From: Salisapilia sapeloensis CBS 127946
Lineage: Eukaryota > Protista > Oomycota
NCBI GenBank assembly: GCA_023334545.1
Contig: JAADVB010000043.1
Coordinates: 33,878 to 97,877 of the forward strand
Length of the DNA: 64,000 nucleotides
Direction: 5' to 3'
The position numbers and the translations under genes are program-made. Under the pieces are notes generated by a model. It was not told the DNA's origin, ran no database searches, and saw only the letters and a program-made list of their open reading frames with translations. This document shows positions 13,392-43,389 of the stretch, piece after piece. Within the stretch, counting starts at the first letter, position 1. Every line of letters begins with the position of its first letter.

Positions 13392-16300
13392 CTATCGTCC
13401 AGCAGTCGAACAGTCTGGAACCCACGGCGTCGTCGTCGAGTCCGTTGAACTCGTACTCAGCTGCTCACCGTCACTATGCGGGACGTTGCCGACGTGATCA
13501 AAGTGGGTCTCACCCTTGGCCAGCACGAGAGACAGCGAGTGTCCTCGCTGTCGCTCTTTATCGTCCGCATCTTTTGGCTGTTCCTTGCGCTTTCGGACGC
13601 GAAGACCTGTGGTATGCCGTCGCTGGACACGTCTCTCCAAGTCGCTTTCGATACCGACTAGATACCTGTGCATGGCATTGAGGAACCGCCGTCGATACGA
13701 GATCGGACTGATGACTGTCGGATTCCGGAACATAAGACTCGCTTTCGACGTTGACTCCATCTTCTTGAGAAAATCGAACTGGTGCAAGTAGTCGATCAGA
13801 CCAACAACCACACGTCGCTTCTCTTCTTCAAAAACCATCAAGATCGAGTAGTCCACGACGCCAGCGTAGCACAAGAACCCCGTATCGTTCGTCACCGCAG
13901 CTTCAAACATGTCCAAGTCCTTTTGGTAGACAGGTACGGGTATCCTTTCGGCCAAATTACCGTCCAAGAGCACTGGCTTCTCCGTCGTCAATTGGGCGTT
14001 CGAAATGGACTCGACGTCGCTCTCATCGTTACTTTCTTCATCACTCGACGTGTTATACCGACGTCGTAAAATACCTTTTAAGTCATACATCTGCGCACGT
14101 TGGAAACCGTATGCGAGATTCTCCATCACGACAACGTACGTCACGCGCTTCCCACCCTTCCGTCCTTGTGTGATCTTAAACAGCCCCAATACCTTACTCA
14201 ACACCGTCGGAGTGTCCTGTGCCAAGACACGTGCCATGAACTTGAAGTAGTGCGGAGCCATGTGCAAGAACATGTTAAACTCCGTCGCAGAGATACCTTT
14301 AAGCAAGTATCTCTTGTCCAGCGTCTTGCTGAACAAGGCACCAGACTTGCCTCCAGTCACTTCCCACGCGCGGCTCATCGACAACGAGTTGAGGAACTCC
14401 AAGTTACCAGGCTCAATCAACGCCCGAAGAGCGTGGAACTGCGCGGCGAAGAAACTCACGACCTGCACATCTCGCTGGACTGCATTCTCTTCGAAAAAGA
14501 ACTTAGAGTCGGTATGCTGGAGCTCACTCGAGCTGATTTGACTCAAGTACTGCTCCTTCCTCGCTTCGGATCCTGGAAACTCATACGTCGCATGCCTACT
14601 CCCTCTCTTCGCGTTCTGAATCGCTTCGTCACTACGCAACGTCTCTTCCAGTCGCAAGTCCGACGGTACGTCGATCGTATTGCCCAAGTACCCTTCCAAC
14701 TGCTCCACATACGCCTTCGACGTCAGTGTAAATGCGATGAGGGAGCCTAAATCCTTGTCTGACACACGGACGACGTAGCCATTGACGCCACGAGGTAGCT
14801 CCAAGTGTCCATCACGTAGCGTCTGTGGGATTTCATGGTACGTCCGAATGCGAATGGACTCTCCGGCAGGACCGTTGCTAGATGTCGATACAGGTCGAGC
14901 GTTGTCCAGTAGCGACGTCGTTCGATACGCCTTCTTCTTCTCTAAAGACCCACCGGCAGCCGTTAAGATCGCCGATAGATTATTCGGCGCACTACGACTC
15001 GATCGACTGACAGACACTTCTTTTGGTGAGCTCGTGAACCAATCTGGCGGGATCCGACGCTTCGTCGGAGATTCGACAAACACTTTCTTGATCGTCGCAT
15101 GGACAGAGGATGGAGCGAGGCCGATCATACTGTTATGTGCATCCATCGCTTCGTCAAATAACTCTTTCTTCAAGCTATTGCACTGCAAGACACAAGGCTT
15201 TGGATCTCGTTCCATCAAGTTTGCGAGCTTGACACGAAAGACGGCGGAAGAACTCTTGGTGCGTACACGTAGTTGCTCAATTTCATCTCGTGGCGTATGT
15301 GCATTCCCAGATAACATCTGAGCTGTCGAGACGAGACTGTCTTCTAGAATATCCAAGTTCGAGAGCACGACGGACGTCACGGCGTCGATGGCAGCCTCCA
15401 TATCGCGTTCGAATGAACGTAAAAAGTCGTTTTGAAAGTCTTCATTCACCACACCTTTCGGGTACATAGTGGCTGATACGAGATGATACGGTCGCCATGC
15501 ACGATGGTGTCGATGTCCACACTCGGTATTGGTGTTATCGGCTGGTGCGACGATCGAGCCTTCGTCCGTGGCGGTACTAGATCGCAATCGACGTAATGTC
15601 CTGGACCTGAAGAATCCATGTGAGCTACTGCTTTCTGAATCTTCGGCAAAGAACGATTCGCGACTGCGGATAATTAGTTCACTGATCGCAGACAGCCATT
15701 CCGACCGCGTGCGTGCATCGACGGCGTTCAGACGTAGCTTGTGATCTCCTTTGACCACGAGGAACTGGAACTGATGCGGATTTGTTGACTCTTCCACTTG
15801 CAGCGTTGTGTGTCGGTCGATTAAATCTTCTCGGATCTCGACCAAAGACGTCGCGTCCTTGAGACACACGAGAGAGCTCGTGTCAAGTCGGAGGTAGAAA
15901 TACCGAAGCTTCCAACTGCGTGAGAGGGATCGACGGAGACCCAGCCATCCTTCCATCTGAATGTCCTCGCCGTTCACGTGGACAGTCTCATAGTGCTCTG
16001 CTTTCCGAGATGTTGGTGGTAGTTGTAAATAGGACAAAAATGAATCGGAATGTGTTCGATAATATAGCTTTGGTGTCAAATCCGTGTCGTCATCTGGAGA
16101 CGGAGAAGCCTTGTCTGGGCTTTCATCCGTCAGCAATCGCGTTTCCGACGGAGGTCTCTTCACTCGCGTACGTATCCATCGTCTTCGTCGGACAAAATGG
16201 TAATAGTCTCGCTTACACTTGCTAGTTCCGGATGCTAGACGTTGGTTGATACGTTCGACGGAGGAGCCGTACGTCCACCCTTCTTCATCACACTGCGTGT

Positions 16301-16544
16301 ACTCGACGTCCGGTTGCCATGGATGACTCCACATCCATTCAGGTGGGATGGTATCAACTTCCGTCGTCACGTGCTTTTCATCCAAAGTATTCAGCCGGTC
16401 GTCGTCATCGGAGCCTAGGTTAGCCGCAGCAGACGTGAGGAGACGGAGGGTGCTTCCCCCTCGATCACAGAAGCGTTCAAAGACCCATCCGTGAAAAGGC
16501 TGAAAGGACTGGACTTCAAAGACCTCTTCGACTGCAGACTCCAT
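13392..16544 (-). CDS. Fab1/PIKfyve-like phosphatidylinositol phosphate kinase with N-terminal DysF and PH domains
   Basis: Intronless, 1050 aa. DysF: EVFEVQSFQPFHGW..WMWSHPW..DEEGWTYG..VRRRRWIR. PH: MEGWLGLRR..WKLRYFYL..EWLSAI. PIPK: SLIAFTL, FAAQFHALR, GGKSGALF..K, MENL, YDLKG, VDYS, GLIDY, PTVISP..YRRRF. No FYVE or TCP1/Cpn60-like domain visible. Confidence 0.85.
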   Translation of the reverse strand: MESAVEEVFEVQSFQPFHGWVFERFCDRGGSTLRLLTSAAANLGSDDDDRLNTLDEKHVTTEVDTIPPEWMWSHPWQPDVEYTQCDEEGWTYGSSVERINQRLASGTSKCKRDYYHFVRRRRWIRTRVKRPPSETRLLTDESPDKASPSPDDDTDLTPKLYYRTHSDSFLSYLQLPPTSRKAEHYETVHVNGEDIQMEGWLGLRRSLSRSWKLRYFYLRLDTSSLVCLKDATSLVEIREDLIDRHTTLQVEESTNPHQFQFLVVKGDHKLRLNAVDARTRSEWLSAISELIIRSRESFFAEDSESSSSHGFFRSRTLRRLRSSTATDEGSIVAPADNTNTECGHRHHRAWRPYHLVSATMYPKGVVNEDFQNDFLRSFERDMEAAIDAVTSVVLSNLDILEDSLVSTAQMLSGNAHTPRDEIEQLRVRTKSSSAVFRVKLANLMERDPKPCVLQCNSLKKELFDEAMDAHNSMIGLAPSSVHATIKKVFVESPTKRRIPPDWFTSSPKEVSVSRSSRSAPNNLSAILTAAGGSLEKKKAYRTTSLLDNARPVSTSSNGPAGESIRIRTYHEIPQTLRDGHLELPRGVNGYVVRVSDKDLGSLIAFTLTSKAYVEQLEGYLGNTIDVPSDLRLEETLRSDEAIQNAKRGSRHATYEFPGSEARKEQYLSQISSSELQHTDSKFFFEENAVQRDVQVVSFFAAQFHALRALIEPGNLEFLNSLSMSRAWEVTGGKSGALFSKTLDKRYLLKGISATEFNMFLHMAPHYFKFMARVLAQDTPTVLSKVLGLFKITQGRKGGKRVTYVVVMENLAYGFQRAQMYDLKGILRRRYNTSSDEESNDESDVESISNAQLTTEKPVLLDGNLAERIPVPVYQKDLDMFEAAVTNDTGFLCYAGVVDYSILMVFEEEKRRVVVGLIDYLHQFDFLKKMESTSKASLMFRNPTVISPISYRRRFLNAMHRYLVGIESDLERRVQRRHTTGLRVRKRKEQPKDADDKERQRGHSLSLVLAKGETHFDHVGNVPHSDGEQLSTSSTDSTTTPWVPDCSTAGR

Positions 16545-33314: not shown

Positions 33315-34727
33315 CTAGAGCTTGGACGAGATCGTCGGCTCGAAGACAATTCTATCTTGCAAAAGAGATTGGATCTCTTCGTCCGAATGATGCAGTTCGT
33401 CACGAAGAACTTGCCTCGTATCCTCTCCCATCTTTCGTCCACCCCATTTCGTTCGACCTGGCGTCGACAATAGCTTTGGTAAGATCGCCGGCACCTTCAG
33501 ATCACGCTTCGTACTGCTTCCATCAGCAGCAACGTCATCGATCTCGATTGTCTCAAACATGCCACGATGCTTGTAGTGCTCATTCTTCATGATATCTTCG
33601 ACCGAGTAGACAAGACCAACGGGCACATTTGCTCCTTCCATGACCTCCACAACATGATCAATCGAGTGCTCAGCTGTCCACTTGGCAACCGCAGCATCAA
33701 TCTCTTCCTGATAGTCCACGCGATCCTTGTTCGCAGCGTATTTCGGATTCTCCGCCATATCGTCTCGACCGATCGCACGCATCAACTTACCAAACAACGT
33801 GTCCGTATTCGCAGCGACGACAATGTCCTTGCCATCTCCACAAGTATACGTGTTGGAAGGTACGATACCGGTAATCGTTGAGCCAGATCGTTCTCGCACG
33901 ATGCCAGCGTAGTCGTACTCTGGGACGACCGCTTCGAGCAAATTGAACATACTTTCGTATATTGCTACATCGACCACCTGCCCACCTGGGGTCATCCCAC
34001 GCTCTCGACCGAGTAGCGCCGTGATGATTCCTAAAGCAGCGTGGATACCAGCGATAGTGTCCCCCAGACTGAGGTTCTGACGAGCTGGTACTTGGTCTGG
34101 AAATCCATTCACGTAGCGAAAGCCACCTACAGCTTCGCACACGGAGGCAAATCCGGGTCTAGTAGCAGGTTAGAAGTTGTCTGGATCGCAACAACTTAGA
34201 TGTATATACCTAGGAGAGTATGGTCCTTCTTGACCAAAGCCAGAGACGCGAGCAAAGATGAGACCTGGGTTTGTGTCCTCAAAATCTTGTGGGCCAAGTC
34301 CCCATTCTTCCATCCGACCAGGTTTAAAGTTCTCAACTAGTACATCACTTTGCGTGACGAGGTCCCGGACGATCTCCCGACCTCGCTCGGTCTTGATGTC
34401 CACCGACACTGATCGTTTGTTTCGTGCAAGTGAATGCCACCACAAGGACGTTCCAGATGAATCCAATTGCCGAAGGTCTCGCAATTGGTCACCACTTGGC
34501 GGTTCGATCTTGATCACATCTGCACCAAAGTAGCTCATGATCGTAGCGGCAAACGGGCCGGCGATCAGATGACCACATTCGACCACCTTAATCCCTTCTA
34601 ACGGGAGTTTCGGAGCTTTTGGCGACTGCGACGTCGATTCAGATGATGGGGGCGAGATATTCAATGTCGTGACGGATCTTTTCCATTTTGGAACGAACGT
34701 AGGTAGACGAGATCGGAGGTGCAACAT
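33315..34727 (-). CDS. Family III CoA-transferase (CaiB/BaiF, SUGCT/formyl-CoA transferase-like), probably mitochondrial
   Basis: PLEGIKVVE..IAGPFAA..GADVIKIEPP.GD, RNKRSV..D, DVLVENFKPG, SGFGQEGPY, LGDTIAG (catalytic Asp position). One ~51-nt intron near 34210-34160. Arg/Ser-rich, presequence-like N-terminus. Confidence 0.9.
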
Positions 34728-36510: not shown

Positions 36511-37527
36511 TTACTTGTCTAGAGCTATTCGGATAGACTCATTCGATCCTTTGCCCACCATTCTCCTCAGTCGCATCGTACCGTGTAGCTCTTCTACCGC
36601 TGGAATCGTCGATGCATATTTCTCGACGATAGCTTTCCACGTTGTGGATGGTTTCACAAGCGTTCGGAATGTGCCGGATGCGTGACGCTTGCGAATGTTG
36701 TCGAGCATCTCGCCACTCGATTTTCCGCCACCATGCTCAGTTGCTTCCCTCCTGCTGTTAAATGAAATGATAGTTGCGTCTTGGAAGATATCGATAGGAG
36801 AATCTTCATCTGATGGAGATAGTAAAGACTGTAGGACTCTTGGTGTTGGTGCCAAGAGAAAGTCATCAGGTTGCGTATGAGCAAAGAGAAGACCAAAGTT
36901 TAGTTCTGTCGTTTCGCTTGTTGAGGACTGTGTGGATGGTGGTAAATCGATACACAAGATCTGACTTTGTGCGTACATGGACGTATCATGTTCAAAAGCC
37001 TCACGCACGGTGCTTTCCGATGCAAAAGTGAAGGCAGCAAATAGCATATCATAGGACTGTAGTATCTTTGCTCGGACATGCGTCGCATACTCTGTCGTAT
37101 CCTCTGATAGTGGTGCTCCAGACTGATCTATACTCTCATTAGTCCGCTGCTTCTTTGCGTCAGGACTGTCACCATCGCTTTCCTCTTCACTATCGGAAAC
37201 AACCATCGGAGGTCTGTTCACTAGTGACGGGAAGCAGGTGCGAGCATCTCGTAGAAATTGCACGGACGTCTCACCAACGTCAATGATTTGTATGGAAGGC
37301 GTCGGTACTGTATGATTCTCATTCGAGGTAGCAGGCAATGGAAGCACAAGTAGTGTGCGCTGAGACGTCGGTTTAACACGTCCTCCTACTCCTGTTATCT
37401 GCCTATCACCTGCTGACTTGGATGCACCTGTCACCACAACATACTCTTCAATTGTTAGCGCTCCTTTCTGCTGCAAAGTCTCAGCCTCCAACGGTGCATC
37501 CGCCGTCCTTCCCGTAAAGATGAACAT
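36511..37527 (-). CDS. Hypothetical protein (338 aa)
   Basis: Intronless ATG-started ORF with coding-like composition, acidic patch followed by KKQR, flanked by short intergenic gaps. No domain recognised. Confidence 0.7.
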   Translation of the reverse strand: MFIFTGRTADAPLEAETLQQKGALTIEEYVVVTGASKSAGDRQITGVGGRVKPTSQRTLLVLPLPATSNENHTVPTPSIQIIDVGETSVQFLRDARTCFPSLVNRPPMVVSDSEEESDGDSPDAKKQRTNESIDQSGAPLSEDTTEYATHVRAKILQSYDMLFAAFTFASESTVREAFEHDTSMYAQSQILCIDLPPSTQSSTSETTELNFGLLFAHTQPDDFLLAPTPRVLQSLLSPSDEDSPIDIFQDATIISFNSRREATEHGGGKSSGEMLDNIRKRHASGTFRTLVKPSTTWKAIVEKYASTIPAVEELHGTMRLRRMVGKGSNESIRIALDK

Positions 37528-37712
37528 CTTGTGGCTTTTTATGCGATAAGATGTCGTAGAAATCTATGAAAGCGAAAGAAAATAAAAAAGTCTTTGGCCA
37601 TGCGATATGAATGTACTCGCAAGCTACTCTACCGATCTATACGCTTATAATGCTGCATGTACGAACTCGATATCATGAACGTAAACGAAAGAGTTGAATT
37701 TTACTATCCTCT

Positions 37713-40700
37713 CTAGATATACACATCACGCGGGATCTGAGGTGGTTTCAAGACCTCTTCAACGAGGAAGTCGACTGGGAATTCAACCAAGTGGCCTCGA
37801 ATCGTCGACAGTTTACCCCGAGCCTTCGTAAAGTCCGACGGTAACGTCGCTGCTGTCTGTAAGTGCGCGATCTGACCGTCGTTTTCATCACCCGACTTGC
37901 TCTCCTCGTCGCTACTTCGACCTGACTCGAGCAACGGTTCATCGCGCTCTTCATCCTGCAAATACTCTTGCTTGAACTTAGACCGTCGAGACGGATCATG
38001 CGATCCATCCAAGAACGAATGCCACTTGCGCATACTCTGACGAACGCCTTTACTAAACGACCCAGAGCTGCTGCGTAGCATATTTCGATCGACCTGATCC
38101 ACCTCTTCCTCCTCGTCCAAAACTCCTTCTTGCGCTGCTGCTACAAGCGCACTGTCCAAGTTACCCATGCTACGTGCCCCAGCAAACGGACCTCCTCGTG
38201 CACGGAACGGATTATGTCCTGGACTTATCGAGTGTTTCCAGAAGCTAGAGGCAGCAGGCGAACTCGGATTCGACATGTCACCTGCATGTTCCGAGAAATT
38301 GCGCCGTCGACCTTGTGGTACAGCAAACGAGCTAGAGCGAGGTAACGACAGCTCTCCTTCTTTCAGTCTTCTCCAGAACGATGGTTGTCGTTGATGTTGT
38401 TCATCATCACTGTCAGGTGTTTCAATCTCCCGCATCAACGCTTCATGCGCCGCCGAGTCTTTCTTCACCCACCGTCGACGACGCACCTGTGCTATCAATC
38501 GGTCTGTCATAAAGTGTTGCAGCTTCTCTCTCCTGCCCATATCATGTGCCCTCACTTCCTGGAATGTTGCAAAGTTACGAGCGTAGCACCATCCATCCGA
38601 ATCCATTGAAAAGATATGCTTGCGCTTCTTATCCTTGACACAATCGAGGACGTACTCGGAGAATCGAACTTTATCTTCCGGAATCGGCACGCCGTTCGCA
38701 TCAGTCCATGGCGCATAATCCTCTTCTTTCAGATTATCCTTATCCCACGCATGACCACCAGGTCCTTTGAGGACTTTAAGACGCTGGTTTTCGTAGATTT
38801 GAGTAATCTCGGCATCACGAAAGTCTGCGAAACCACGCATCTTGTTCGACGGAGCGCACTGGAAGACTTCTTCAAACGCAGTCGTGTTGTTCCGAGCGAT
38901 ACGAAGGATGCTCTGCCATGTTCCTTCACAAGTCGGATCACGAATACTTTGATTGTCATCACTTAGGCCAAGGTGTTCTCGCATCAGCTGCATCCGAAGC
39001 TTGGAAGCAGACACACCTCTTCGATATGGCTTGTCGTTCATGAGTCCTTCTTCGAAGAGACAGTCGTCGAGGACCAAGGCGATTTCAGAATCACGATCTC
39101 CGTTCATGCTCCGATCGTTGATGTTGGCACTACCCAAGATGATCCGACGATCATCAGCGATAAGAAGCTTGCAGTGGATGTACACTTGCTCCGTGGACAT
39201 GCAACCATTCGGCATCAACCCATAGTTACGCAGCCCAAAGAATGTGACGTAGCGACTCGCTTCGGGTGTAAAGTCACTCACCTTCTCCAGTAAGCTCATC
39301 CCGCCACGAGAGATGGTCGTGTACTGCCAGTGCATGACCGCATGCAAGTTCGTGAGCTTTTCACTACGAATGTTTCCTTCGAACGCTGGCATCAATGGCA
39401 TTAGAATGTATACACGGAACTGCTGGTTGTTATCAACTGCCTGTTTGATCCGATCGACAAGTGCCTGCAAGATGCGATTGCTTACGAGCGTATTGTCATC
39501 TGTACCGGAGATAAAGAACTGGTTCTCAATGTACACATAATGTCGAGCGTTCAAGATCGTATCAATGTATGCGTTCTGGATACTCCGTTCGATGCGGTCT
39601 ACACCAGCCGACCACTGTGCGACGGAACGTAGTGCCTGACAGTTGACGTACATGGAGTTCGGATGGAAGACTTTCAGGACAGAATCGCCGCGTTGAGCAC
39701 GTATCACTTCCCCTGACTCGAGCGAATTGGTGTCGATACTAGCGCTATCAATCGCTGTATTCGTCGGCATGAATCCACTCAAGTCACGGATTTCATCTCC
39801 CTGCAACTGCACCACCGGACCTTCACTATTGGTCGATAGATTCGTATTCGGGAACGGTCGTCGTATATCGCCATGTGTCTGTGCCGATGAACTGTCTGTG
39901 ACGTCACCCAAGGCGTTCAGAGTCTTTCCAGACGCGTCTTGATTCGTCGGATACCTCAGCTTCCAACCGTTAAAGTCCATCGGGATGATGCACTTCGGGA
40001 GCTTTACAAACCGTCTCGATCGACAGCAGATGCACCAGCCAGTACGTAATTGATAATCGTTCTTGCTACAGACAAAGTTCCATCGCTGGATGAAGTGGAA
40101 CGCCAGGTCCTGGACAACTGGTCCCGACACGCTCGAGTGGACGTCATGCCACGGCATACGAGGTGCTGACGACCGGTCAATCAAGTCCTCGAACGGTTTG
40201 TTGACACGAACAAAGTCTTTGATCACAGGATTCGAGTAGTCTTTCCCGGGCCATATCTGGTTCTCTAGCTTTGCTCCTCCGTCATCATTAATCGGATGAC
40301 CGCCATGGTCGTACCGGCCAAAGCACAAGTCCAATCCACCAACAAATGCGAGCGATTGGTCGATGCATACAATTTTCTCATGATGCGACCAGAAACCGAG
40401 ACTCTGGATCTGGAAGATCGGGTCTCGTAGCACACGAATGTTCGGATGACGCATGAGACTGCGTTTCGAATAGTGACTGTTGATCGTCAAGACGAACTTG
40501 ACTTCACGATAGATGAGAACGTAGATTTTGACACCTTCCTCCGCCTTGGCGAGCAGCAAGTTCCGGAGCTGCGTCTCATTTGTCTGGTCCTTGTCACTCT
40601 CTTTACGCTCAAACTTCCGTCCGGGACGTTTTAAGTACAAGTCAGGACAGACCCACCAACCAGCGATGAGCACTTCGTACTTGGCGTTCTTGATCGCATT

Positions 40701-42767
40701 GTACATGGCTTCGTACGTGTCTTCGGCATCGACATGCCAGCTGACAGTACATGGCGTGCTGAGACTGGACGGAATCGGCTGATCGTCGTCTTCATCGACC
40801 TTCTGGTTATCCTTTATCTGACTTAGATTCGAATGAGAGCTCGCGTGAGCTGCGTTCATGGCGCCATCCACTTCCACAGTGTTGATGCGTCGAGGTGCGA
40901 AGGACTCGTATCGGTAATCCGATTCCAGTCGCTTGAGATTCTGCAGACGCTGGACGCAACGGAACCAGTTATCTCTTCGGACCTGAGCATGCCAGATACC
41001 ACCGTACGTTGCGATGTAGTAGACGGACAGACCAATGATAGGGGACACGATTCCTCCAGCCAGTAGGAAGAGAATGTACTTGATCACTGTTTGCCAGTCG
41101 ATCGGTGCGATGGACGCAGGTACGCTACAGATTTTATTCGTCTTGTAGTACCCTTCTTCAGATCCGACAATTCCTTGGAGTTTGAGCTCTCCGAGACCCG
41201 GAACATCATATGTAATGCCACTATCGTAGTACTCGACATCCTCTGTCCACTCTCTTAGTACACCAACGACAGGGGCACTTGCAATGGTCGTCGTGAGCAG
41301 ATTAAAGTCCGACACGTCATCACTGTTCCAAAAGTAGGCTGGGTTACGCACATACAAATTGGTCGAATTCCCTGGTTCCTGTAGTTGGATGACAATGATA
41401 TTCTCCGTGTCTCGACTAACACGAACTCTCGATCCATCGGGGACATGGAAGTAGAAACCGCACAAGTGCGATTGGTCCACAGAGGAAGAGTTACTCACAT
41501 TCTGCCATGGTTGAAAGTCGGGCATCTCTGGTAACGTGACGCCACGTCCGTACTCGCTTGCAAGACTAACGGTGTGGAAGTCGTAGGCGTATGAAGATAG
41601 CTTCATGACTCCGTAGCAAACGACTATCAATGCAGCAAAGACTGTCGTACGCATGTAGTAGAACCCAGTGTCAATCTCAATGAACCCTGCACCACTACCG
41701 ACGATGACGCCGCTCGGCATCCACGACACACCCTGTCGATAGCTACCTTTTGTAGCTTGGAATGACTTGTCAAAGAGGAATACCTCACTTGGTTCTGAAT
41801 CGTTTCGACGACGATAGGCGGCAAAACAAGATGGCTTTAAGACGACCCACCGGCGGACGACTCCAAGCCGATGGTGGAAGAACTGATAGACAAAGGCGAC
41901 GACGTAGATGATGCCGAGGATACTGGCGATACCCAAGAGTATCCTCACAAAGCTCGTATCGAGTCGGACGCTCGGACCGTCCTCATCGACTGATGTTACT
42001 TCACTGCGGAAGAGTGACGGAAGGTTGGTTACGATTACGAGTACGATGGGGAAAATGAAACCCACGACAGACGACACAAAGGCTACACGCATGCCCGTTC
42101 GATAGAGCAGTCGATAGATATGCTCGACCGTTCGGCTAAAGCACGAATAAAGCGGCAGTTGGAACGCACCATTCACACGCATGTGGACGTATCCTTCCTT
42201 TAGCGATGGACCGTATCGAGACATGGCACGAGAAGGTGAGACTTCTAAGAAAGATAGCAAGGCTTCGGAATTCCGAATCATCCGGTCTTTTAATAACGTC
42301 CGGATGTGTTCCTGTACGACGCCTACGTCCTTCACGCGCTTTTCCGATCGTTTTTCACGCCATATTGTCCACGGAAGGAAGAATTGTCGTGACCAACCTT
42401 GTCGATGCCATAATAAATGCCATAGGATGCTTATCTGTAGTCGCACGAGTTGTTTTTGTGTGAATGTGATGTTCCATTCTGTAGTTCCCCATGTCACGCG
42501 CCCGATGAAAAGGCAGACGGGAATGATGCCTGTGCGGATGACCTTGGCACGATAAACGTTGAAATCAATCGCGTGTTCCAGCACCTCTTCTGCATCTTCA
42601 CCTTCATCACTCAGTTCATCATCGTCGTTCATGATAGTCATCTCACCGTCAAATCCGTCGACGACGTCACTCAACTCACCGTCGAACGAGACGGACGAGT
42701 CTACAACGTCGTGCAGGTCGTAATGGCGAGGGGTGTCGTCTTCTGTGGGGGAGTCTTGTGCCTGCAT
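37713..42767 (-). CDS. PLD: Transmembrane phospholipase D of the oomycete PXTM-PLD type, with an embedded DysF module
   Basis: Intronless 1684 aa. PX-like N-terminus (..NSEALLSFLEVS), PH-like strands split by TM helices (KEGYVHMR ... RRWVVLKP), further TM segments, IAGWWVCP, HKD1 HHEKIVCID, PRMPWHDV, HKD2 YIHCKLLIADD..GSANINDRS, C-terminal IRGHLVEFP. Confidence 0.92.
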   Translation of the reverse strand: MQAQDSPTEDDTPRHYDLHDVVDSSVSFDGELSDVVDGFDGEMTIMNDDDELSDEGEDAEEVLEHAIDFNVYRAKVIRTGIIPVCLFIGRVTWGTTEWNITFTQKQLVRLQISILWHLLWHRQGWSRQFFLPWTIWREKRSEKRVKDVGVVQEHIRTLLKDRMIRNSEALLSFLEVSPSRAMSRYGPSLKEGYVHMRVNGAFQLPLYSCFSRTVEHIYRLLYRTGMRVAFVSSVVGFIFPIVLVIVTNLPSLFRSEVTSVDEDGPSVRLDTSFVRILLGIASILGIIYVVAFVYQFFHHRLGVVRRWVVLKPSCFAAYRRRNDSEPSEVFLFDKSFQATKGSYRQGVSWMPSGVIVGSGAGFIEIDTGFYYMRTTVFAALIVVCYGVMKLSSYAYDFHTVSLASEYGRGVTLPEMPDFQPWQNVSNSSSVDQSHLCGFYFHVPDGSRVRVSRDTENIIVIQLQEPGNSTNLYVRNPAYFWNSDDVSDFNLLTTTIASAPVVGVLREWTEDVEYYDSGITYDVPGLGELKLQGIVGSEEGYYKTNKICSVPASIAPIDWQTVIKYILFLLAGGIVSPIIGLSVYYIATYGGIWHAQVRRDNWFRCVQRLQNLKRLESDYRYESFAPRRINTVEVDGAMNAAHASSHSNLSQIKDNQKVDEDDDQPIPSSLSTPCTVSWHVDAEDTYEAMYNAIKNAKYEVLIAGWWVCPDLYLKRPGRKFERKESDKDQTNETQLRNLLLAKAEEGVKIYVLIYREVKFVLTINSHYSKRSLMRHPNIRVLRDPIFQIQSLGFWSHHEKIVCIDQSLAFVGGLDLCFGRYDHGGHPINDDGGAKLENQIWPGKDYSNPVIKDFVRVNKPFEDLIDRSSAPRMPWHDVHSSVSGPVVQDLAFHFIQRWNFVCSKNDYQLRTGWCICCRSRRFVKLPKCIIPMDFNGWKLRYPTNQDASGKTLNALGDVTDSSSAQTHGDIRRPFPNTNLSTNSEGPVVQLQGDEIRDLSGFMPTNTAIDSASIDTNSLESGEVIRAQRGDSVLKVFHPNSMYVNCQALRSVAQWSAGVDRIERSIQNAYIDTILNARHYVYIENQFFISGTDDNTLVSNRILQALVDRIKQAVDNNQQFRVYILMPLMPAFEGNIRSEKLTNLHAVMHWQYTTISRGGMSLLEKVSDFTPEASRYVTFFGLRNYGLMPNGCMSTEQVYIHCKLLIADDRRIILGSANINDRSMNGDRDSEIALVLDDCLFEEGLMNDKPYRRGVSASKLRMQLMREHLGLSDDNQSIRDPTCEGTWQSILRIARNNTTAFEEVFQCAPSNKMRGFADFRDAEITQIYENQRLKVLKGPGGHAWDKDNLKEEDYAPWTDANGVPIPEDKVRFSEYVLDCVKDKKRKHIFSMDSDGWCYARNFATFQEVRAHDMGRREKLQHFMTDRLIAQVRRRRWVKKDSAAHEALMREIETPDSDDEQHQRQPSFWRRLKEGELSLPRSSSFAVPQGRRRNFSEHAGDMSNPSSPAASSFWKHSISPGHNPFRARGGPFAGARSMGNLDSALVAAAQEGVLDEEEEVDQVDRNMLRSSSGSFSKGVRQSMRKWHSFLDGSHDPSRRSKFKQEYLQDEERDEPLLESGRSSDEESKSGDENDGQIAHLQTAATLPSDFTKARGKLSTIRGHLVEFPVDFLVEEVLKPPQIPRDVYI

Positions 42768-43389
42768 TCCATTAACTAGAGAATATGGCGCAAGACGATA
42801 TCTGTTGATGTGACGACGCTTGCGACGGGATGGAAATGCCAGAAATCAGCAAAGGACGGAGTGGCTGAACGGTCTTTTCGTAGGCTCCGATCTTTTTTAC
42901 TGAACGCAGTACGATTAATCTGGCGAACGCTACAAAGAGCAACAGTTAGGTATCGCTGTGTGGATAAATGTATCGATAGGTGCACTGCACACGTAAAGAA
43001 GAGCACGTCCTCGACGACCTCTTCGCATGCACCCATACGAAGGAACAATAGGAAGGACACATACCTTGTGCAAGGTATGTCGCGATCGTCAATATGAACA
43101 AGAACTAGCGGGAATTGCTCAAGCTGGCTTTGTTGAGGCGACGAGCAGATCGGAACCGCAGTTGTCAGAGGTTCCTCCGCTGACTTGCTCGATACAATGC
43201 GACGACCAGAGCGTGCGTGTTGCGAGATCATACTTCGAGGAACATTCGGAAAACCTTTTGCGTATCTGAATGCTTGGTTGTGGTCGGTTTGAAATCCATT
43301 CGGACACCAGCTTCATAATTTTTTTTCGTCGCTGTCGCAAACGTATCTTTGTGTGGTGGACCTTGTAGTGCTTTCGAATGATTATAAAC

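What the first reader, a model, noticed from the sequence alone, without database searches (positions are those of the whole stretch)
38465..38800. Complete DysF domain embedded in the C-terminal catalytic region of the transmembrane PLD
Seen: after HKD2 the protein reads QIYENQR..W..EDYAPWTDANG..DSDGWCYARNF..VRRRRWVKK before the normal PLD tail (IRGHLVEFP). Established: YENQR, D..GW.YA..F and VRRRRW are the DysF hallmarks of ferlins, Pex30/Pex24-family peroxins and TECPR1; DysF domains have been reported to bind lipids (sphingomyelin for TECPR1, phosphatidic acid for Pex30). Inference: a PA-producing enzyme with a built-in putative lipid sensor could give product feedback or recruitment to damaged membranes or contact sites. 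I am not aware of this insert being described for PXTM-PLD, but cannot check.
Basis: partly seen in the sequence, partly recalled or inferred. Interest (0 to 1): 0.7.

Follow-up and report, generated by a model that had tools for sequence, protein, structure and literature searches.

The report
Trimmed DysF domain inside oomycete phospholipase D
The membrane-spanning phospholipase D of this oomycete, and of every oomycete orthologue found, carries a real but trimmed dysferlin-type (DysF) domain in the last loop of its catalytic region, so an enzyme that makes phosphatidic acid is joined to a domain type recently shown to bind that lipid; what the domain does here is untested.

Summary
A 1684-aa intronless ORF (window 37713-42767, minus strand) is the oomycete PXTM-type PLD. 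After HKD2 it reads YENQR / WTDANG / DSDGWCYARNF / VRRRRW (aa 1321-1436, window 38460-38807), then a 211-aa Ser/acid-rich linker, then the normal PLD tail.

Is it a DysF domain? Yes, but a divergent and trimmed one.
- Pfam Pex24p scores below threshold (12 bits, E 0.08).
- Profile-profile comparison with 25 canonical DysF domains gives 98.4% probability, E 4.7e-15, over the full length. Column-shuffled controls reach a score of at most 22, against 85.5.
- A model built with DysF sequences in its alignment matches only DysF structures among 48,161 PDB chains: TECPR1 Z 8.3, myoferlin 6.8, dysferlin 5.7, next best 2.4.
- The domain lacks the central LPxGWxW tryptophan block and has 8 extra residues before VRRRRW. 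"Complete" is therefore too strong.

The insert is as conserved as the catalytic core. It is present in all 36 orthologues from Saprolegniales to Peronosporales, absent from the PXPH-PLD paralogue, and retained in spliced mRNA.

Lipid sensing is plausible but inferred; the sphingomyelin-binding residues of TECPR1 are not kept.

No paper I could search describes this insert. Elsewhere in this genome the scan had already noted trimmed DysF domains on flippases; I confirmed two, plus a DysF-bearing PIP kinase.

The parts
37713..42767 (-). PXTM-type phospholipase D gene: one uninterrupted ORF of 1684 aa plus stop
   Evidence: ORF list. Pfam PLDc x2 and PLDc_2. 36 oomycete orthologues, some named Pi-PXTM-PLD. 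Transcript contigs 37686-42931 identical in two samples.
40314..40394 (-). HKD1 catalytic motif (aa 792-818)
   Evidence: Pfam PF00614 best stretch 792-818; HHEK at aa 795-798.
39108..39176 (-). HKD2 catalytic motif (aa ~1198-1220) with GSANIN
   Evidence: PF00614 match at G000:C734:72985-73053 = window 39108-39176; HCK aa 1198-1200 and GSANIN aa 1212-1217.
38814..38897 (-). Last conserved PLD helix before the insert (aa 1291-1318), equivalent to human PLD2 chain residues 557-584
   Evidence: Profile A1 versus PDB 6ohm; phmmer alignment, query 17-163 = PLD2 438-584.
38460..38807 (-). Trimmed DysF domain (aa 1321-1436)
   Evidence: hhalign versus canonical DysF: 98.4%, E 4.7e-15, 104 columns. 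hmmsearch with the canonical profile: aa 1322-1436, profile 3-118/120, 22.9 bits. Model matches 8p5p at Z 8.3, 9h6x at 6.8, 4cah at 5.7. Pfam Pex24p is weak, E 0.08.
38781..38795 (-). YENQR motif, first long beta-strand of the DysF finger
   Evidence: E, N and R are invariant in 36 orthologues; aligned with (Y/F)EN(Q/E)R of canonical DysF; strand E3-10 in the model.
38571..38603 (-). DSDGWCYARNF motif (D..GW.YA..F)
   Evidence: D, G, W, Y, A, R, N and F are invariant; aligned with D.(D/E)GW.YA.DF of canonical DysF.
38469..38486 (-). VRRRRW motif, last long beta-strand of the DysF finger
   Evidence: aligned with VRRRRW of canonical DysF; strand E108-115 in the model.
37827..38459 (-). Ser/Glu/Arg/Asp-rich variable linker (aa 1437-1647), probably disordered
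   Evidence: Mean identity to orthologues is 0.28, against 0.65 for DysF. The distance from VRRRRW to the tail motif varies from 121 to 295 aa among orthologues. Composition S33 E20 R19 D17 of 211.
37716..37826 (-). Canonical PLD C-terminal tail (aa 1648-1684, IRGHLVEFPVDFL...)
   Evidence: Aligns to PLD2 chain 598-627 and PLD1 chain 558-589; mean identity 0.65.
42930..43064 (-). 135-nt GT..AG intron in the 5' UTR of the PLD mRNA
   Evidence: Contigs of runs X1, X3 and X5 leave the window at 42931. Their next letters lie at 43067-43096. The sequence shows ct...ac on the + strand, which is GT..AG on the minus strand.

Best explanation
Shown. The segment aa 1321-1436 is a diverged, trimmed DysF (dysferlin/Pex30/TECPR1-type) domain. 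It is inserted, with a 211-aa flexible linker behind it, into the surface loop that joins the last helix of the PLD catalytic domain to the C-terminal tail. That loop is 13 residues in human PLD2 and 10 in PLD1; here it is 329. The domain keeps the two long terminal beta-strands (YENQR and VRRRRW), the D.DGW.YA..F core and the WTD.NG loop. It has lost the LPxGWxW tryptophan pair and gained a short helix before the last strand. It is fixed in oomycete PXTM-PLD, as conserved as the catalytic core, and present in the mRNA.

Inferred. With four hydrophobic segments, both the PX-like N-terminus and the catalytic/DysF part face the cytosol. I propose the DysF finger works as in Pex30: a membrane-docking module. 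Its tip would be the segments after the first strand (RLKVLK...W) and before the last strand (KLQHFMTDRLIAQ), plus the invariant ARNF. The tip would insert into bilayers rich in anionic or cone-shaped lipid, most likely phosphatidic acid, the enzyme's own product. Because it sits just upstream of the tail that completes the catalytic domain, and on a long tether, docking would hold or orient the catalytic domain on PA-rich or poorly packed membrane, either in cis or on an apposed membrane. That would give product-dependent retention or activation.
For: Homology:
- hhalign of 36 PLD inserts (A2) versus 25 canonical DysF domains (A4): Prob 98.4, E 4.7e-15, full length.
- A2 versus a single green-alga DysF: 96.6%, E 6.5e-10.
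- Sequence-shuffle and column-shuffle controls reach at most 20.1 and 22.0, against 54.5 and 85.5.
- A4 is anchored to solved DysF structures: 8p5p 3.6e-23, 2k2o 2e-8, 4cah 2e-8.
- The canonical profile hits the PLD at aa 1322-1436 (22.9 bits, E 1e-4 at proteome size) and the same place in nearly all orthologues.
- Pfam Pex24p gives weak hits in 21 of 36 orthologues. Where the alignment was shown (the window's own insert), it lies on the DysF part of the model, positions 249-358.
- The three nearest ESM-Atlas feature neighbours are Pex24p clusters.

Fold:
- AF2 model pLDDT 78, pTM 0.73.
- Among 48,161 PDB representatives, only DysF chains reach Z >= 5 (8.3, 6.8, 5.7); the next is 2.4.
- Foldseek's top 7 are all DysF. 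Atlas neighbours are TECPR1, Pex24p and VASt-DysF.

Place: PLD2 438-584 and 598-627 flank the insert.

Selection: mean identity 0.65 in DysF, 0.64 in the HKD2 core, 0.28 in the linker; 28 invariant columns.

Expression: a spliced transcript contig spans the whole ORF.

Function by analogy: the DysF domains of Pex30, Pex28, Pex29, Pex31 and human dysferlin bind PA through the segments next to the first and last strands (PMC12101078, PMC12101077).

Context: in this genome DysF is also attached to a PIP kinase, two P4-ATPase flippases, C2 proteins and a further protein (L001) whose relatives carry VASt domains.
Against: - Pfam's curated threshold is not reached (12.4 versus 26.8 bits).
- The PLD-insert profile finds no canonical DysF protein at E <= 1e-3 among 1.84 billion proteins and no DysF chain in the PDB.
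- AF2 with oomycete PLD sequences alone gave a poor model (pLDDT 50.6) with no fold match. The good model therefore depends on an alignment that already contained DysF sequences.
- The WxW pair of the Trp/Arg stack is missing.
- TECPR1's lipid-site residues W77, D143 and KKW are replaced (PMC10476172).
- No lipid-binding, localisation or activity data exist for this domain.
- Topology rests on a hydropathy plot only; Meijer et al. predicted five TM helices (PMC3056787).
Confidence: 0.55

Rival explanations
1. The insert is a genuine DysF derivative but does not bind lipid. It would serve as a protein-protein or intramolecular regulatory module, for example an autoinhibitory plug or a docking site for a partner. 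The phosphorylatable Ser-rich linker would act as the switch.
For: The tryptophan pair and the TECPR1 and Pex30 aromatic tip residues are lost. Most human DysF domains were not recruited to damaged membranes (PMC10476172). The invariant residues (DYAPWTDVNGVP, ARNF) are specific to the PLD family and are not shared with lipid-binding DysF domains. A long Ser/acid-rich linker follows the domain. The flippase DysF copies sit right after the autoinhibitory GFAF motif (note s1-296385).
Against: PA binding was found for every DysF domain tested by Ferreira et al., including human dysferlin (PMC12101078). The host enzyme and the other DysF-bearing proteins of this genome all act on membrane lipids. 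Basic and hydrophobic residues persist in both segments that anchor Pex30 DysF to the bilayer.
Confidence: 0.27
2. The insert is an evolutionary relic. A DysF domain was captured once in an expandable loop and now serves only as a folded spacer without a specific ligand.
For: The same loop is expanded by ~135 aa of acidic low-complexity sequence in the PXPH-PLD paralogue, so the site tolerates insertions. The domain is trimmed.
Against: The insert is as conserved as the catalytic core, at 0.65 against 0.64, while the adjoining linker is at 0.28. 28 columns are invariant from Aphanomyces to Phytophthora. In a ~95%-identical relative, many of the listed differences lie a multiple of 3 bases apart, as expected for synonymous sites.
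Confidence: 0.1
3. The resemblance to DysF is chance or convergent: short motifs plus an arginine run. The segment would then be an unrelated oomycete-specific fold, or an EF-hand-like loop.
For: Pfam scores below threshold. There is no HMMER-level hit to DysF in the PDB or in the 1.84-billion-protein library. A weak calcineurin-B (EF-hand) alignment has E 0.6-1. The PLD-only AF2 model is poor.
Against: The full-length profile-profile match has E 4.7e-15 and shuffled controls are far below it. The match survives removal of the RRRRW tail. Motif order and spacing are collinear in MAFFT. The EF-hand consensus fails at loop positions 5 (W) and 12 (A) of DSDGWCYARNFA. DysF is the only fold matched.
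Confidence: 0.05

Closest known systems
TECPR1 N-terminal DysF domain (PDB 8p5p; Boyle et al. 2023, PMC10476172)
   Same: It is the best structural match: Z 8.3, rmsd 2.7 A over 86 residues, 29% identity. Shared motifs are YENQR, D.GW.YA.F and VRRRRW. The finger shape is the same, with two long antiparallel terminal strands.
   Different: TECPR1 has the WxW...W tryptophans (W116, W118, W122) stacked on arginines. The PLD insert has deleted W116/W118 and has Tyr or Phe at the W122 position. The sphingomyelin-site residues W77, I142, D143 and K152-K153-W154 correspond to L, R, N and a new helix in the PLD. TECPR1's domain stands free beside propellers, not inside an enzyme's catalytic domain.
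Pex30/Pex23-family DysF domains (Pfam PF06398 Pex24p; PMC12101077, PMC12101078)
   Same: This is the only Pfam family that repeatedly, though weakly, hits the insert; the window's own hit lies on the DysF part of the model. Both domains sit on integral membrane proteins, next to the bilayer. The Pex30 domain binds PA, the product of PLD, through the segments after the first strand and before the last strand. Those segments keep basic and hydrophobic residues in the PLD.
   Different: The score is below the gathering threshold. Pex30's membrane-inserting W298...W303 pair is not conserved. Pex30 has a reticulon-homology domain and no enzymatic activity.
Ferlin inner DysF domains (dysferlin 4cah, myoferlin 2k2o and 9h6x)
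   Same: The fold matches at Z 5.7-6.8 and the C-terminal half motifs are shared.
   Different: Ferlin DysF domains are nested pairs between C2 domains and keep the full Trp/Arg stack. The PLD copy is single and trimmed.
Canonical PX-PH PLDs (human PLD1 6u8z, PLD2 6ohm; oomycete PXPH-PLD paralogue L007)
   Same: Catalytic core, HKD motifs, pre-insert helix and C-terminal tail align well, at 1e-31 to 1e-32.
   Different: The loop holding the DysF is 10-13 residues in human PLD1 and PLD2. In the same genome's PXPH-PLD it is ~135 acidic residues without DysF motifs.
Trimmed DysF tails of oomycete P4-ATPase flippases (L003, L004; scan note s1-296385)
   Same: Same genome. They also lack the LPxGWxW block, L004 also has a long helix-like stretch before VRRRRW, and they too are attached to a lipid-handling enzyme.
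   Different: They are terminal appendages after the GFAF motif, not an insertion within a catalytic domain. There is no special sequence closeness: the PLD-insert profile scores them at only 9-10 bits, so no donor can be named.

Membership tests
DysF domain (dysferlin/Pex30/TECPR1 type) | N-terminal strand motif (Y/F)EN(Q/E)R | tested here: met
   IYENQR at aa 1324-1329; E, N and R are invariant in 36 orthologues; aligned column for column with canonical DysF.
DysF domain (dysferlin/Pex30/TECPR1 type) | LLPxDR...W(S/T)D..G loop motif | tested here: met
   Present in altered form, NLKEEDYAPWTDANG. L, D, W-T-D and G align with LLPTDR..WSD..G.
DysF domain (dysferlin/Pex30/TECPR1 type) | Central LPxGWxW...W.VD tryptophan block that stacks on the arginines (TECPR1 W116, W118, W122) | tested here: not met
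   A block of ~14 residues including WxW is absent in all PLD orthologues. Only (Y/F)xxD remains at the W.VD position. The role of these residues is taken from PMC10476172.
DysF domain (dysferlin/Pex30/TECPR1 type) | D.(D/E)GW.YA..F core motif | tested here: met
   DSDGWCYARNF at aa 1389-1399, invariant D, G, W, Y, A, F.
DysF domain (dysferlin/Pex30/TECPR1 type) | C-terminal strand VRRRRWxRxR | tested here: met
   VRRRRWVKK at aa 1428-1436. The last two basic positions are Lys instead of Arg, and 8 extra residues precede the motif.
DysF domain (dysferlin/Pex30/TECPR1 type) | Significant match to a curated family model (Pfam PF06398 gathering score 26.8) | tested here: not met
   12.4 bits, E 0.08. 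The same model also scores undoubted lone DysF domains of this genome below threshold: the PIP kinase at 13-19 bits and the C2-DysF proteins at 17-19 bits. SMART DysFN/DysFC models were not available.
DysF domain (dysferlin/Pex30/TECPR1 type) | Statistically supported homology to bona fide DysF domains | tested here: met
   hhalign 98.4%, E 4.7e-15, 104 columns; controls; hmmsearch 22.9 bits, E 1e-4 at Z = 20,000.
DysF domain (dysferlin/Pex30/TECPR1 type) | Fold: two long antiparallel terminal strands joined by a wrapping loop | tested here: inconclusive
   The model from the mixed alignment has this fold and matches only DysF structures, at Z 8.3, 6.8 and 5.7. The model from PLD sequences alone was poor, pLDDT 50.6. 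The structural evidence is therefore not independent of the sequence alignment.
DysF domain (dysferlin/Pex30/TECPR1 type) | Binding to membrane lipid (PA for Pex30, sphingomyelin for TECPR1 N'DysF) | not testable with these tools
   Needs liposome or overlay assays. The TECPR1 site residues are not conserved.
HKD phospholipase D (PLD1/2-like) | Two HxKxxxxD motifs, GSANIN, conserved C-terminal tail | tested here: met
   Pfam PLDc x2; HHEK and HCK...GSANIN; PDB PLD2 and PLD1 at 3e-32 and 5e-31, including the tail.
Oomycete PXTM-PLD subfamily (Meijer et al.) | Orthology to Pi-PXTM-PLD and transmembrane segments between the N-terminal region and the catalytic domain | tested here: met
   The hits are 36 oomycete PLDs of 1054-2321 aa (34 of them 1276 aa or longer). 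They include Plasmopara 'Pi-PXTM-PLD' and P. infestans-type proteins. Four hydropathy peaks lie at aa 228-246, 276-294, 376-394 and 565-583.
Oomycete PXTM-PLD subfamily (Meijer et al.) | Recognisable PX domain | tested here: not met
   No Pfam PX hit at E <= 1 in the whole protein. The aa 60-185 region is conserved among orthologues, mean identity 0.53, but I did not test it by profile-profile methods.
EF-hand | 12-residue loop with D/N/S at positions 1, 3 and 5 and E/D at position 12 | tested here: not met
   Only a weak calcineurin-B alignment, E 0.6-1. DSDGWCYARNFA has W at position 5 and A at position 12.

The most novel reading that the evidence does not exclude
The PXTM-PLD is a product-sensing lipase. 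Its built-in DysF finger would bind phosphatidic acid, or PA-induced packing defects, and so lock the catalytic domain onto membrane where PA is already being made, or bridge to an apposed membrane. This would be one instance of an oomycete-wide habit of fitting trimmed DysF modules onto lipid enzymes and transporters (PLD, PIP kinase, P4-ATPase flippases). DysF would then be a general regulatory lipid-reader for membrane-lipid enzymes, not just a ferlin/peroxin curiosity.
Probability: 0.25. Interest if true: 0.75.

Novelty: new variant of a known kind. Interest (0 to 1): 0.55.

Why it matters
DysF was long a domain without a function. In 2023-2025 it was shown to read sphingomyelin (TECPR1) and phosphatidic acid (the Pex30 family and dysferlin). 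A DysF domain fixed inside the catalytic domain of a PA-producing enzyme across the sampled oomycete orders (Saprolegniales, Albuginales, Pythiales, Peronosporales) gives a natural test case for whether DysF domains couple lipid sensing to lipid synthesis.

It also adds an undescribed element to PXTM-PLD. Meijer et al. [quoted passage not shown] Oomycetes include major crop and fish pathogens. The insert family was found only in oomycete-type PLDs (all named hits are oomycetes). An oomycete-specific regulatory domain on an essential-looking lipid enzyme is of basic interest and possibly of applied interest as a selective target.

The trimmed form, without the WxW stack, also shows which parts of the DysF fold are dispensable.

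Tried and rejected
1. Pfam on the whole protein found PLDc only. On the excised segment, Pex24p scored E 0.08, below threshold.
2. PDB sequence searches with the single segment and with PLD-insert profiles found no DysF chain. They found only the PLD2 helix and insignificant calcineurin-B hits. The EF-hand reading is rejected on loop positions 5 and 12.
3. AF2 on the oomycete-only alignment gave pLDDT 50.6, and Foldseek found nothing with that model.
4. An exhaustive HMMER search with the PLD-insert profile over 1.84 billion representatives found only oomycete-type PLDs and fragments. Two further hits are repeat-protein artefacts, P0044 and P0047. The profile therefore does not reach canonical DysF at library-wide significance.
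5. Search for a donor: the insert profile scores other DysF domains of the same genome at 18 bits or less, and those of green algae and animals at 21 bits or less. No closest paralogue can be named.
6. hhalign against the PIP-kinase DysF family aligned only the C-terminal half (91%), because that family has FEVQ instead of YENQR.
7. Two canonical DysF genes of this genome (L001, L002) have an intron inside the domain. I read their exons separately and did not join them for any search or fold.
8. Literature searches for PXTM-PLD, DysF with Phytophthora or oomycete, and DysFN/DysFC found no description of the insert. 'dysf' as a word start mostly matched 'dysfunction'.
9. I could not obtain model coordinates, so I made no electrostatic or surface-conservation map.
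Full report
THE GENE. The finding lies in one uninterrupted minus-strand ORF, window 37713-42767, 1684 aa. Pfam finds two PLDc (HKD) motifs and PLDc_2, and nothing else above noise. A word-index search with aa 1290-1450 returned 36 proteins, and all the named ones are oomycete PLDs. Their lengths are 1054-2321 aa, and 34 of them are 1276 aa or longer. The taxa are Globisporangium, Pythium, Lagenidium, Albugo, Phytophthora, Plasmopara ('Pi-PXTM-PLD'), Bremia, Peronospora, Hyaloperonospora and Aphanomyces. Identity in this segment is 50-66%. The window therefore comes from an oomycete not closely related to any sequenced one (assembly 22.4 Mb in 1365 contigs), and the gene is its PXTM-type PLD.

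THE OBSERVATION.
- YENQR, aa 1325-1329
- WTDANG, aa 1354-1359
- DSDGWCYARNF, aa 1389-1399
- VRRRRW, aa 1428-1433
- IRGHLVEFP, aa 1656-1664

HKD2 is at aa ~1198. Alignment to solved human PLDs fixes the insertion site. Residues 1172-1318 align to PLD2 chain 438-584 and residues 1648-1677 to PLD2 598-627. The loop between them is 13 residues in PLD2 and 10 in PLD1, against 329 here. The first 116 residues of the loop carry the motifs. The remaining 211 are Ser/Glu/Arg/Asp-rich.

IS IT A DysF DOMAIN? Curated-model evidence is weak:
- Pfam Pex24p (PF06398) scores E 0.08 and 12.4 bits against a cut-off of 26.8. The hit covers model positions 249-358, which is the DysF part.
- The same family gives weak hits in 21 of 36 orthologues.
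- That model is also weak for lone DysF domains that are beyond doubt in this genome: the PIP kinase in this window scores 13-19 bits and the C2-DysF proteins 17-19 bits.
- HMMER with the PLD-insert profile (A2) found no DysF chain in the PDB.
- Over 1.84 billion representative proteins it found only oomycete-type PLDs and fragments, plus two repeat artefacts.

I then built an independent reference, A4. It holds 25 non-redundant canonical DysF domains from green-alga VASt-DysF proteins and from both DysF domains of insect and vertebrate TECPR1. A4 hits the solved DysF structures strongly: TECPR1 8p5p 3.6e-23, myoferlin 2k2o 2e-8, dysferlin 4cah 2e-8. The comparisons with A4 gave:
- Profile-profile comparison of A2 with A4: probability 98.4%, E 4.7e-15, score 85.5, 104 aligned columns spanning both profiles end to end.
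- Sixty column-shuffled versions of A4 scored 12.8 +/- 3.5 (max 22.0, max probability 8.9%). The reversed alignment scored 12.8.
- Against a single canonical domain (P0078:561-680) the probability was 96.6%. One hundred sequence shuffles scored 11.8 +/- 2.6 (max 20.1), against 54.5 for the real sequence. Removing the RRRRW tail still left a score of 41.2 over columns 2-82.
- A plain hmmsearch of A4 against the protein hits aa 1322-1436 over profile positions 3-118 of 120, at 22.9 bits and E 1e-4 for a 20,000-protein database. It hits the same place in nearly all orthologues.
- ESM-Atlas feature neighbours are Pex24p clusters.

STRUCTURE. AF2 on the oomycete-only alignment gave a poor model (pLDDT 50.6), and it matched nothing. 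AF2 on a merged alignment of PLD inserts plus canonical DysF domains (A5) gave pLDDT 78.4 and pTM 0.73. It has long terminal strands at residues 3-10 and 108-115.
- Foldseek's seven best PDB hits are all DysF domains. The best is 8p5p, E 2.3e-3, TM 0.55-0.59.
- An exhaustive VIA-align search of 48,161 representative chains found Z >= 5 only for three chains: TECPR1 8p5p (8.3, rmsd 2.7 A over 86 residues), myoferlin 9h6x (6.8) and dysferlin 4cah (5.7). The next chain scores 2.4.
- Atlas neighbours are TECPR1, Pex24p proteins, VASt-DysF proteins and a green-alga diacylglycerol lipase.

Because the alignment fed to AF2 already contained DysF sequences, this shows compatibility with the fold. It is not independent proof.

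HOW IT DIFFERS FROM CANONICAL DysF. The merged alignment shows four differences:
1. The ~14-residue LPxGWxW block is deleted in all PLD orthologues. This removes two of the four tryptophans that Boyle et al. describe as stacking on the arginines (W116 and W118; PMC10476172).
2. The W122 position is Tyr or Phe.
3. The two arginines after RRRRW are lysines.
4. Eight residues (MTDRLIAQ, predicted helical) are inserted before VRRRRW.

"Complete" is therefore too strong; it is a trimmed variant. The two flippase DysF copies of the same genome also lack the WxW block. The insert profile scores them only 9-10 bits, so no donor can be named.

CONSERVATION, DISTRIBUTION, EXPRESSION.
- In a full-length alignment with 17 orthologues, mean identity to the query is 0.65 in the DysF segment, 0.64 in the HKD2 core, 0.75 in the HKD1 core, 0.65 in the tail and 0.28 in the linker.
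- The distance from VRRRRW to the tail motif varies from 121 to 295 residues.
- Twenty-eight columns are invariant from Aphanomyces to Phytophthora.
- The insert profile occurs once in this genome.
- The PXPH-PLD paralogue (L007) has, at the same site, ~135 acidic low-complexity residues without any DysF motif.
- Contigs of two runs (X1, X3; 15-16 Mb of contigs each) match 37686-42931 without a difference. They stop 27 nt beyond the stop codon, leave the intergenic 37590-37685 uncovered, and jump from 42931 to 43067. That removes a 135-nt GT..AG intron in the 5' UTR. They are therefore transcripts, and the mRNA keeps the DysF-coding part.
- A ~95%-identical relative (runs X5, X6) carries the same gene. 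Many of its listed differences lie a multiple of 3 bases apart, as expected for synonymous sites.

MECHANISM (INFERRED). Hydropathy gives four membrane segments and a 170-residue loop with three N-glycosylation sequons between the third and fourth. The N-terminal region and the catalytic/DysF part would then both be cytosolic, as DysF domains are in all characterised proteins. Meijer et al. predicted five helices (PMC3056787), so topology needs a test.

Two 2025 papers show that the DysF domains of Pex30, Pex28, Pex29, Pex31 and human dysferlin bind PA-containing liposomes. They also show that Pex30 inserts two segments into the bilayer: one right after the first strand (residues 296-315) and one right before the last strand (378-398) (PMC12101078, PMC12101077). 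In the PLD the equivalent segments are RLKVLKGPGGHAW and RREKLQHFMTDRLIAQ. They are conserved among orthologues and keep basic and hydrophobic residues, but they have lost the tryptophans.

TECPR1's sphingomyelin site is not conserved. Residues R76, W77, L88, L89, I142, D143, K152, K153 and W154 (PMC10476172) correspond here to R, L, L, K, R, N and the new helix. Sphingomyelin sensing is therefore not predicted.

My best reading is a membrane-docking finger, most likely for PA or PA-rich, loosely packed bilayer. It sits on a flexible tether just before the tail that completes the catalytic domain, and would give product-dependent retention, orientation or activation. I put about 0.95 on DysF homology, about 0.55 on membrane or lipid docking, and about 0.25 on PA specifically.

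CONTEXT IN THE GENOME. The canonical DysF profile finds at least eight further loci:
- Two canonical DysF genes with an intron inside the domain (L001, L002). Green-alga relatives with this type of DysF carry VASt domains, but I did not scan L001 or L002 themselves. I read their exons separately and did not join them.
- The PIP kinase in this window (DysF-PH-PIPK).
- Two P4-ATPase flippases with the DysF after GFAF (L003, L004).
- A WW protein with a long charged C-terminal part (L005).
- Two tandem C2-DysF genes (L006).

Earlier notes of this scan had flagged the kinase and the flippases; I confirmed these independently. So the oomycete repeatedly attaches DysF to lipid enzymes and transporters. 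This fits a lipid-related role but does not prove one.

NOVELTY. Meijer et al. 2011 list PX, TM, a PH remnant, PIP2-binding, IYIENQFF, DRY/EKF and GSANIN for PXTM-PLD, with no DysF. Searches for DysF together with Phytophthora, oomycete or PLD found nothing relevant. The precomputed Pfam annotation of all orthologues shows PLD domains only. I could not query InterPro or SMART, whose DysFN/DysFC models might already flag the segment automatically. I rate it a new variant of a known kind: a known domain, trimmed, in an undescribed position inside a known enzyme.

Noticed in passing
window 13392-16544 (-): A 1050-aa PIP kinase with an N-terminal DysF domain (aa ~5-128, FEVQ instead of YENQR), then PH and PIPK domains. 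The canonical DysF profile scores it E 2.2e-13, while Pfam Pex24p scores only E 0.001-0.05. Orthologues are named PI-PIPK-B. In Pythium oligandrum and [Pythium] brassicae the locus tags of the PIPK and PLD orthologues are 2-4 apart, so the two DysF-bearing lipid enzymes appear to be linked across oomycetes.
   Followed up: partly
L003:1-3984:+ (G000:C509) and L004:2891-7000:- (G000:C628): Two P4-ATPase phospholipid flippases (Pfam PhoLip_ATPase_C 1e-61 and 2e-68) end in a DysF domain placed shortly after a GFAF motif. Both lack the LPxGWxW block, like the PLD insert. Pfam does not report the DysF.
   Followed up: partly
L006:583-1377:- and L006:2404-3204:- (G000:C1300): Two tandem genes of ~265 aa, each a C2 domain followed by a DysF domain: a minimal ferlin-like pairing.
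   Followed up: partly
L001 (G000:C649), L002 (G000:C587), L005:488-2509:- (G000:C1211): Three further DysF proteins. L005 combines a WW domain, a long charged stretch and a DysF.
   Followed up: partly
L007:1944-5078:- (G000:C504): The PXPH-type PLD paralogue (1045-aa ORF) has ~135 acidic low-complexity residues at exactly the loop where PXTM-PLD holds its DysF. This loop is a permissive insertion site in oomycete PLDs.
   Followed up: yes
window 42930-43064 (-): A 135-nt GT..AG intron in the 5' UTR of the PLD transcript, seen as a jump in contigs of three runs. The coding region itself is intronless.
   Followed up: yes
window 33315-34727 (-): The neighbouring ORFs appear to belong to one gene next to the PLD. 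One Phytophthora fragariae database protein (P0030, 2321 aa) carries PF02515 (CoA-transferase family III) fused to the PLD. That is probably a merged gene model reflecting conserved neighbourhood. I did not scan these ORFs.
   Followed up: no
window 41075-41590 (-), aa ~395-564 of the PLD: A 170-residue loop between the third and fourth hydrophobic segments, with three N-x-S/T sequons (aa 423, 426, 467). It is probably extracytosolic. I count four hydrophobic segments, not the five reported for P. infestans.
   Followed up: partly
window 37001-43000, runs X5 and X6: Runs from 2025 labelled as a second organism hold a ~95%-identical copy of the PLD gene in short contigs. Many of the listed differences lie a multiple of 3 bases apart. 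A close relative of the window's organism therefore exists in public data.
   Followed up: no
Fold search atlas row 4: A cluster of green-alga sn-1-specific diacylglycerol lipases (Lipase_3) contains a region structurally similar to the PLD DysF model (TM 0.63 over 85 residues). This may be another lipid enzyme with an unannotated DysF-like domain.
   Followed up: no
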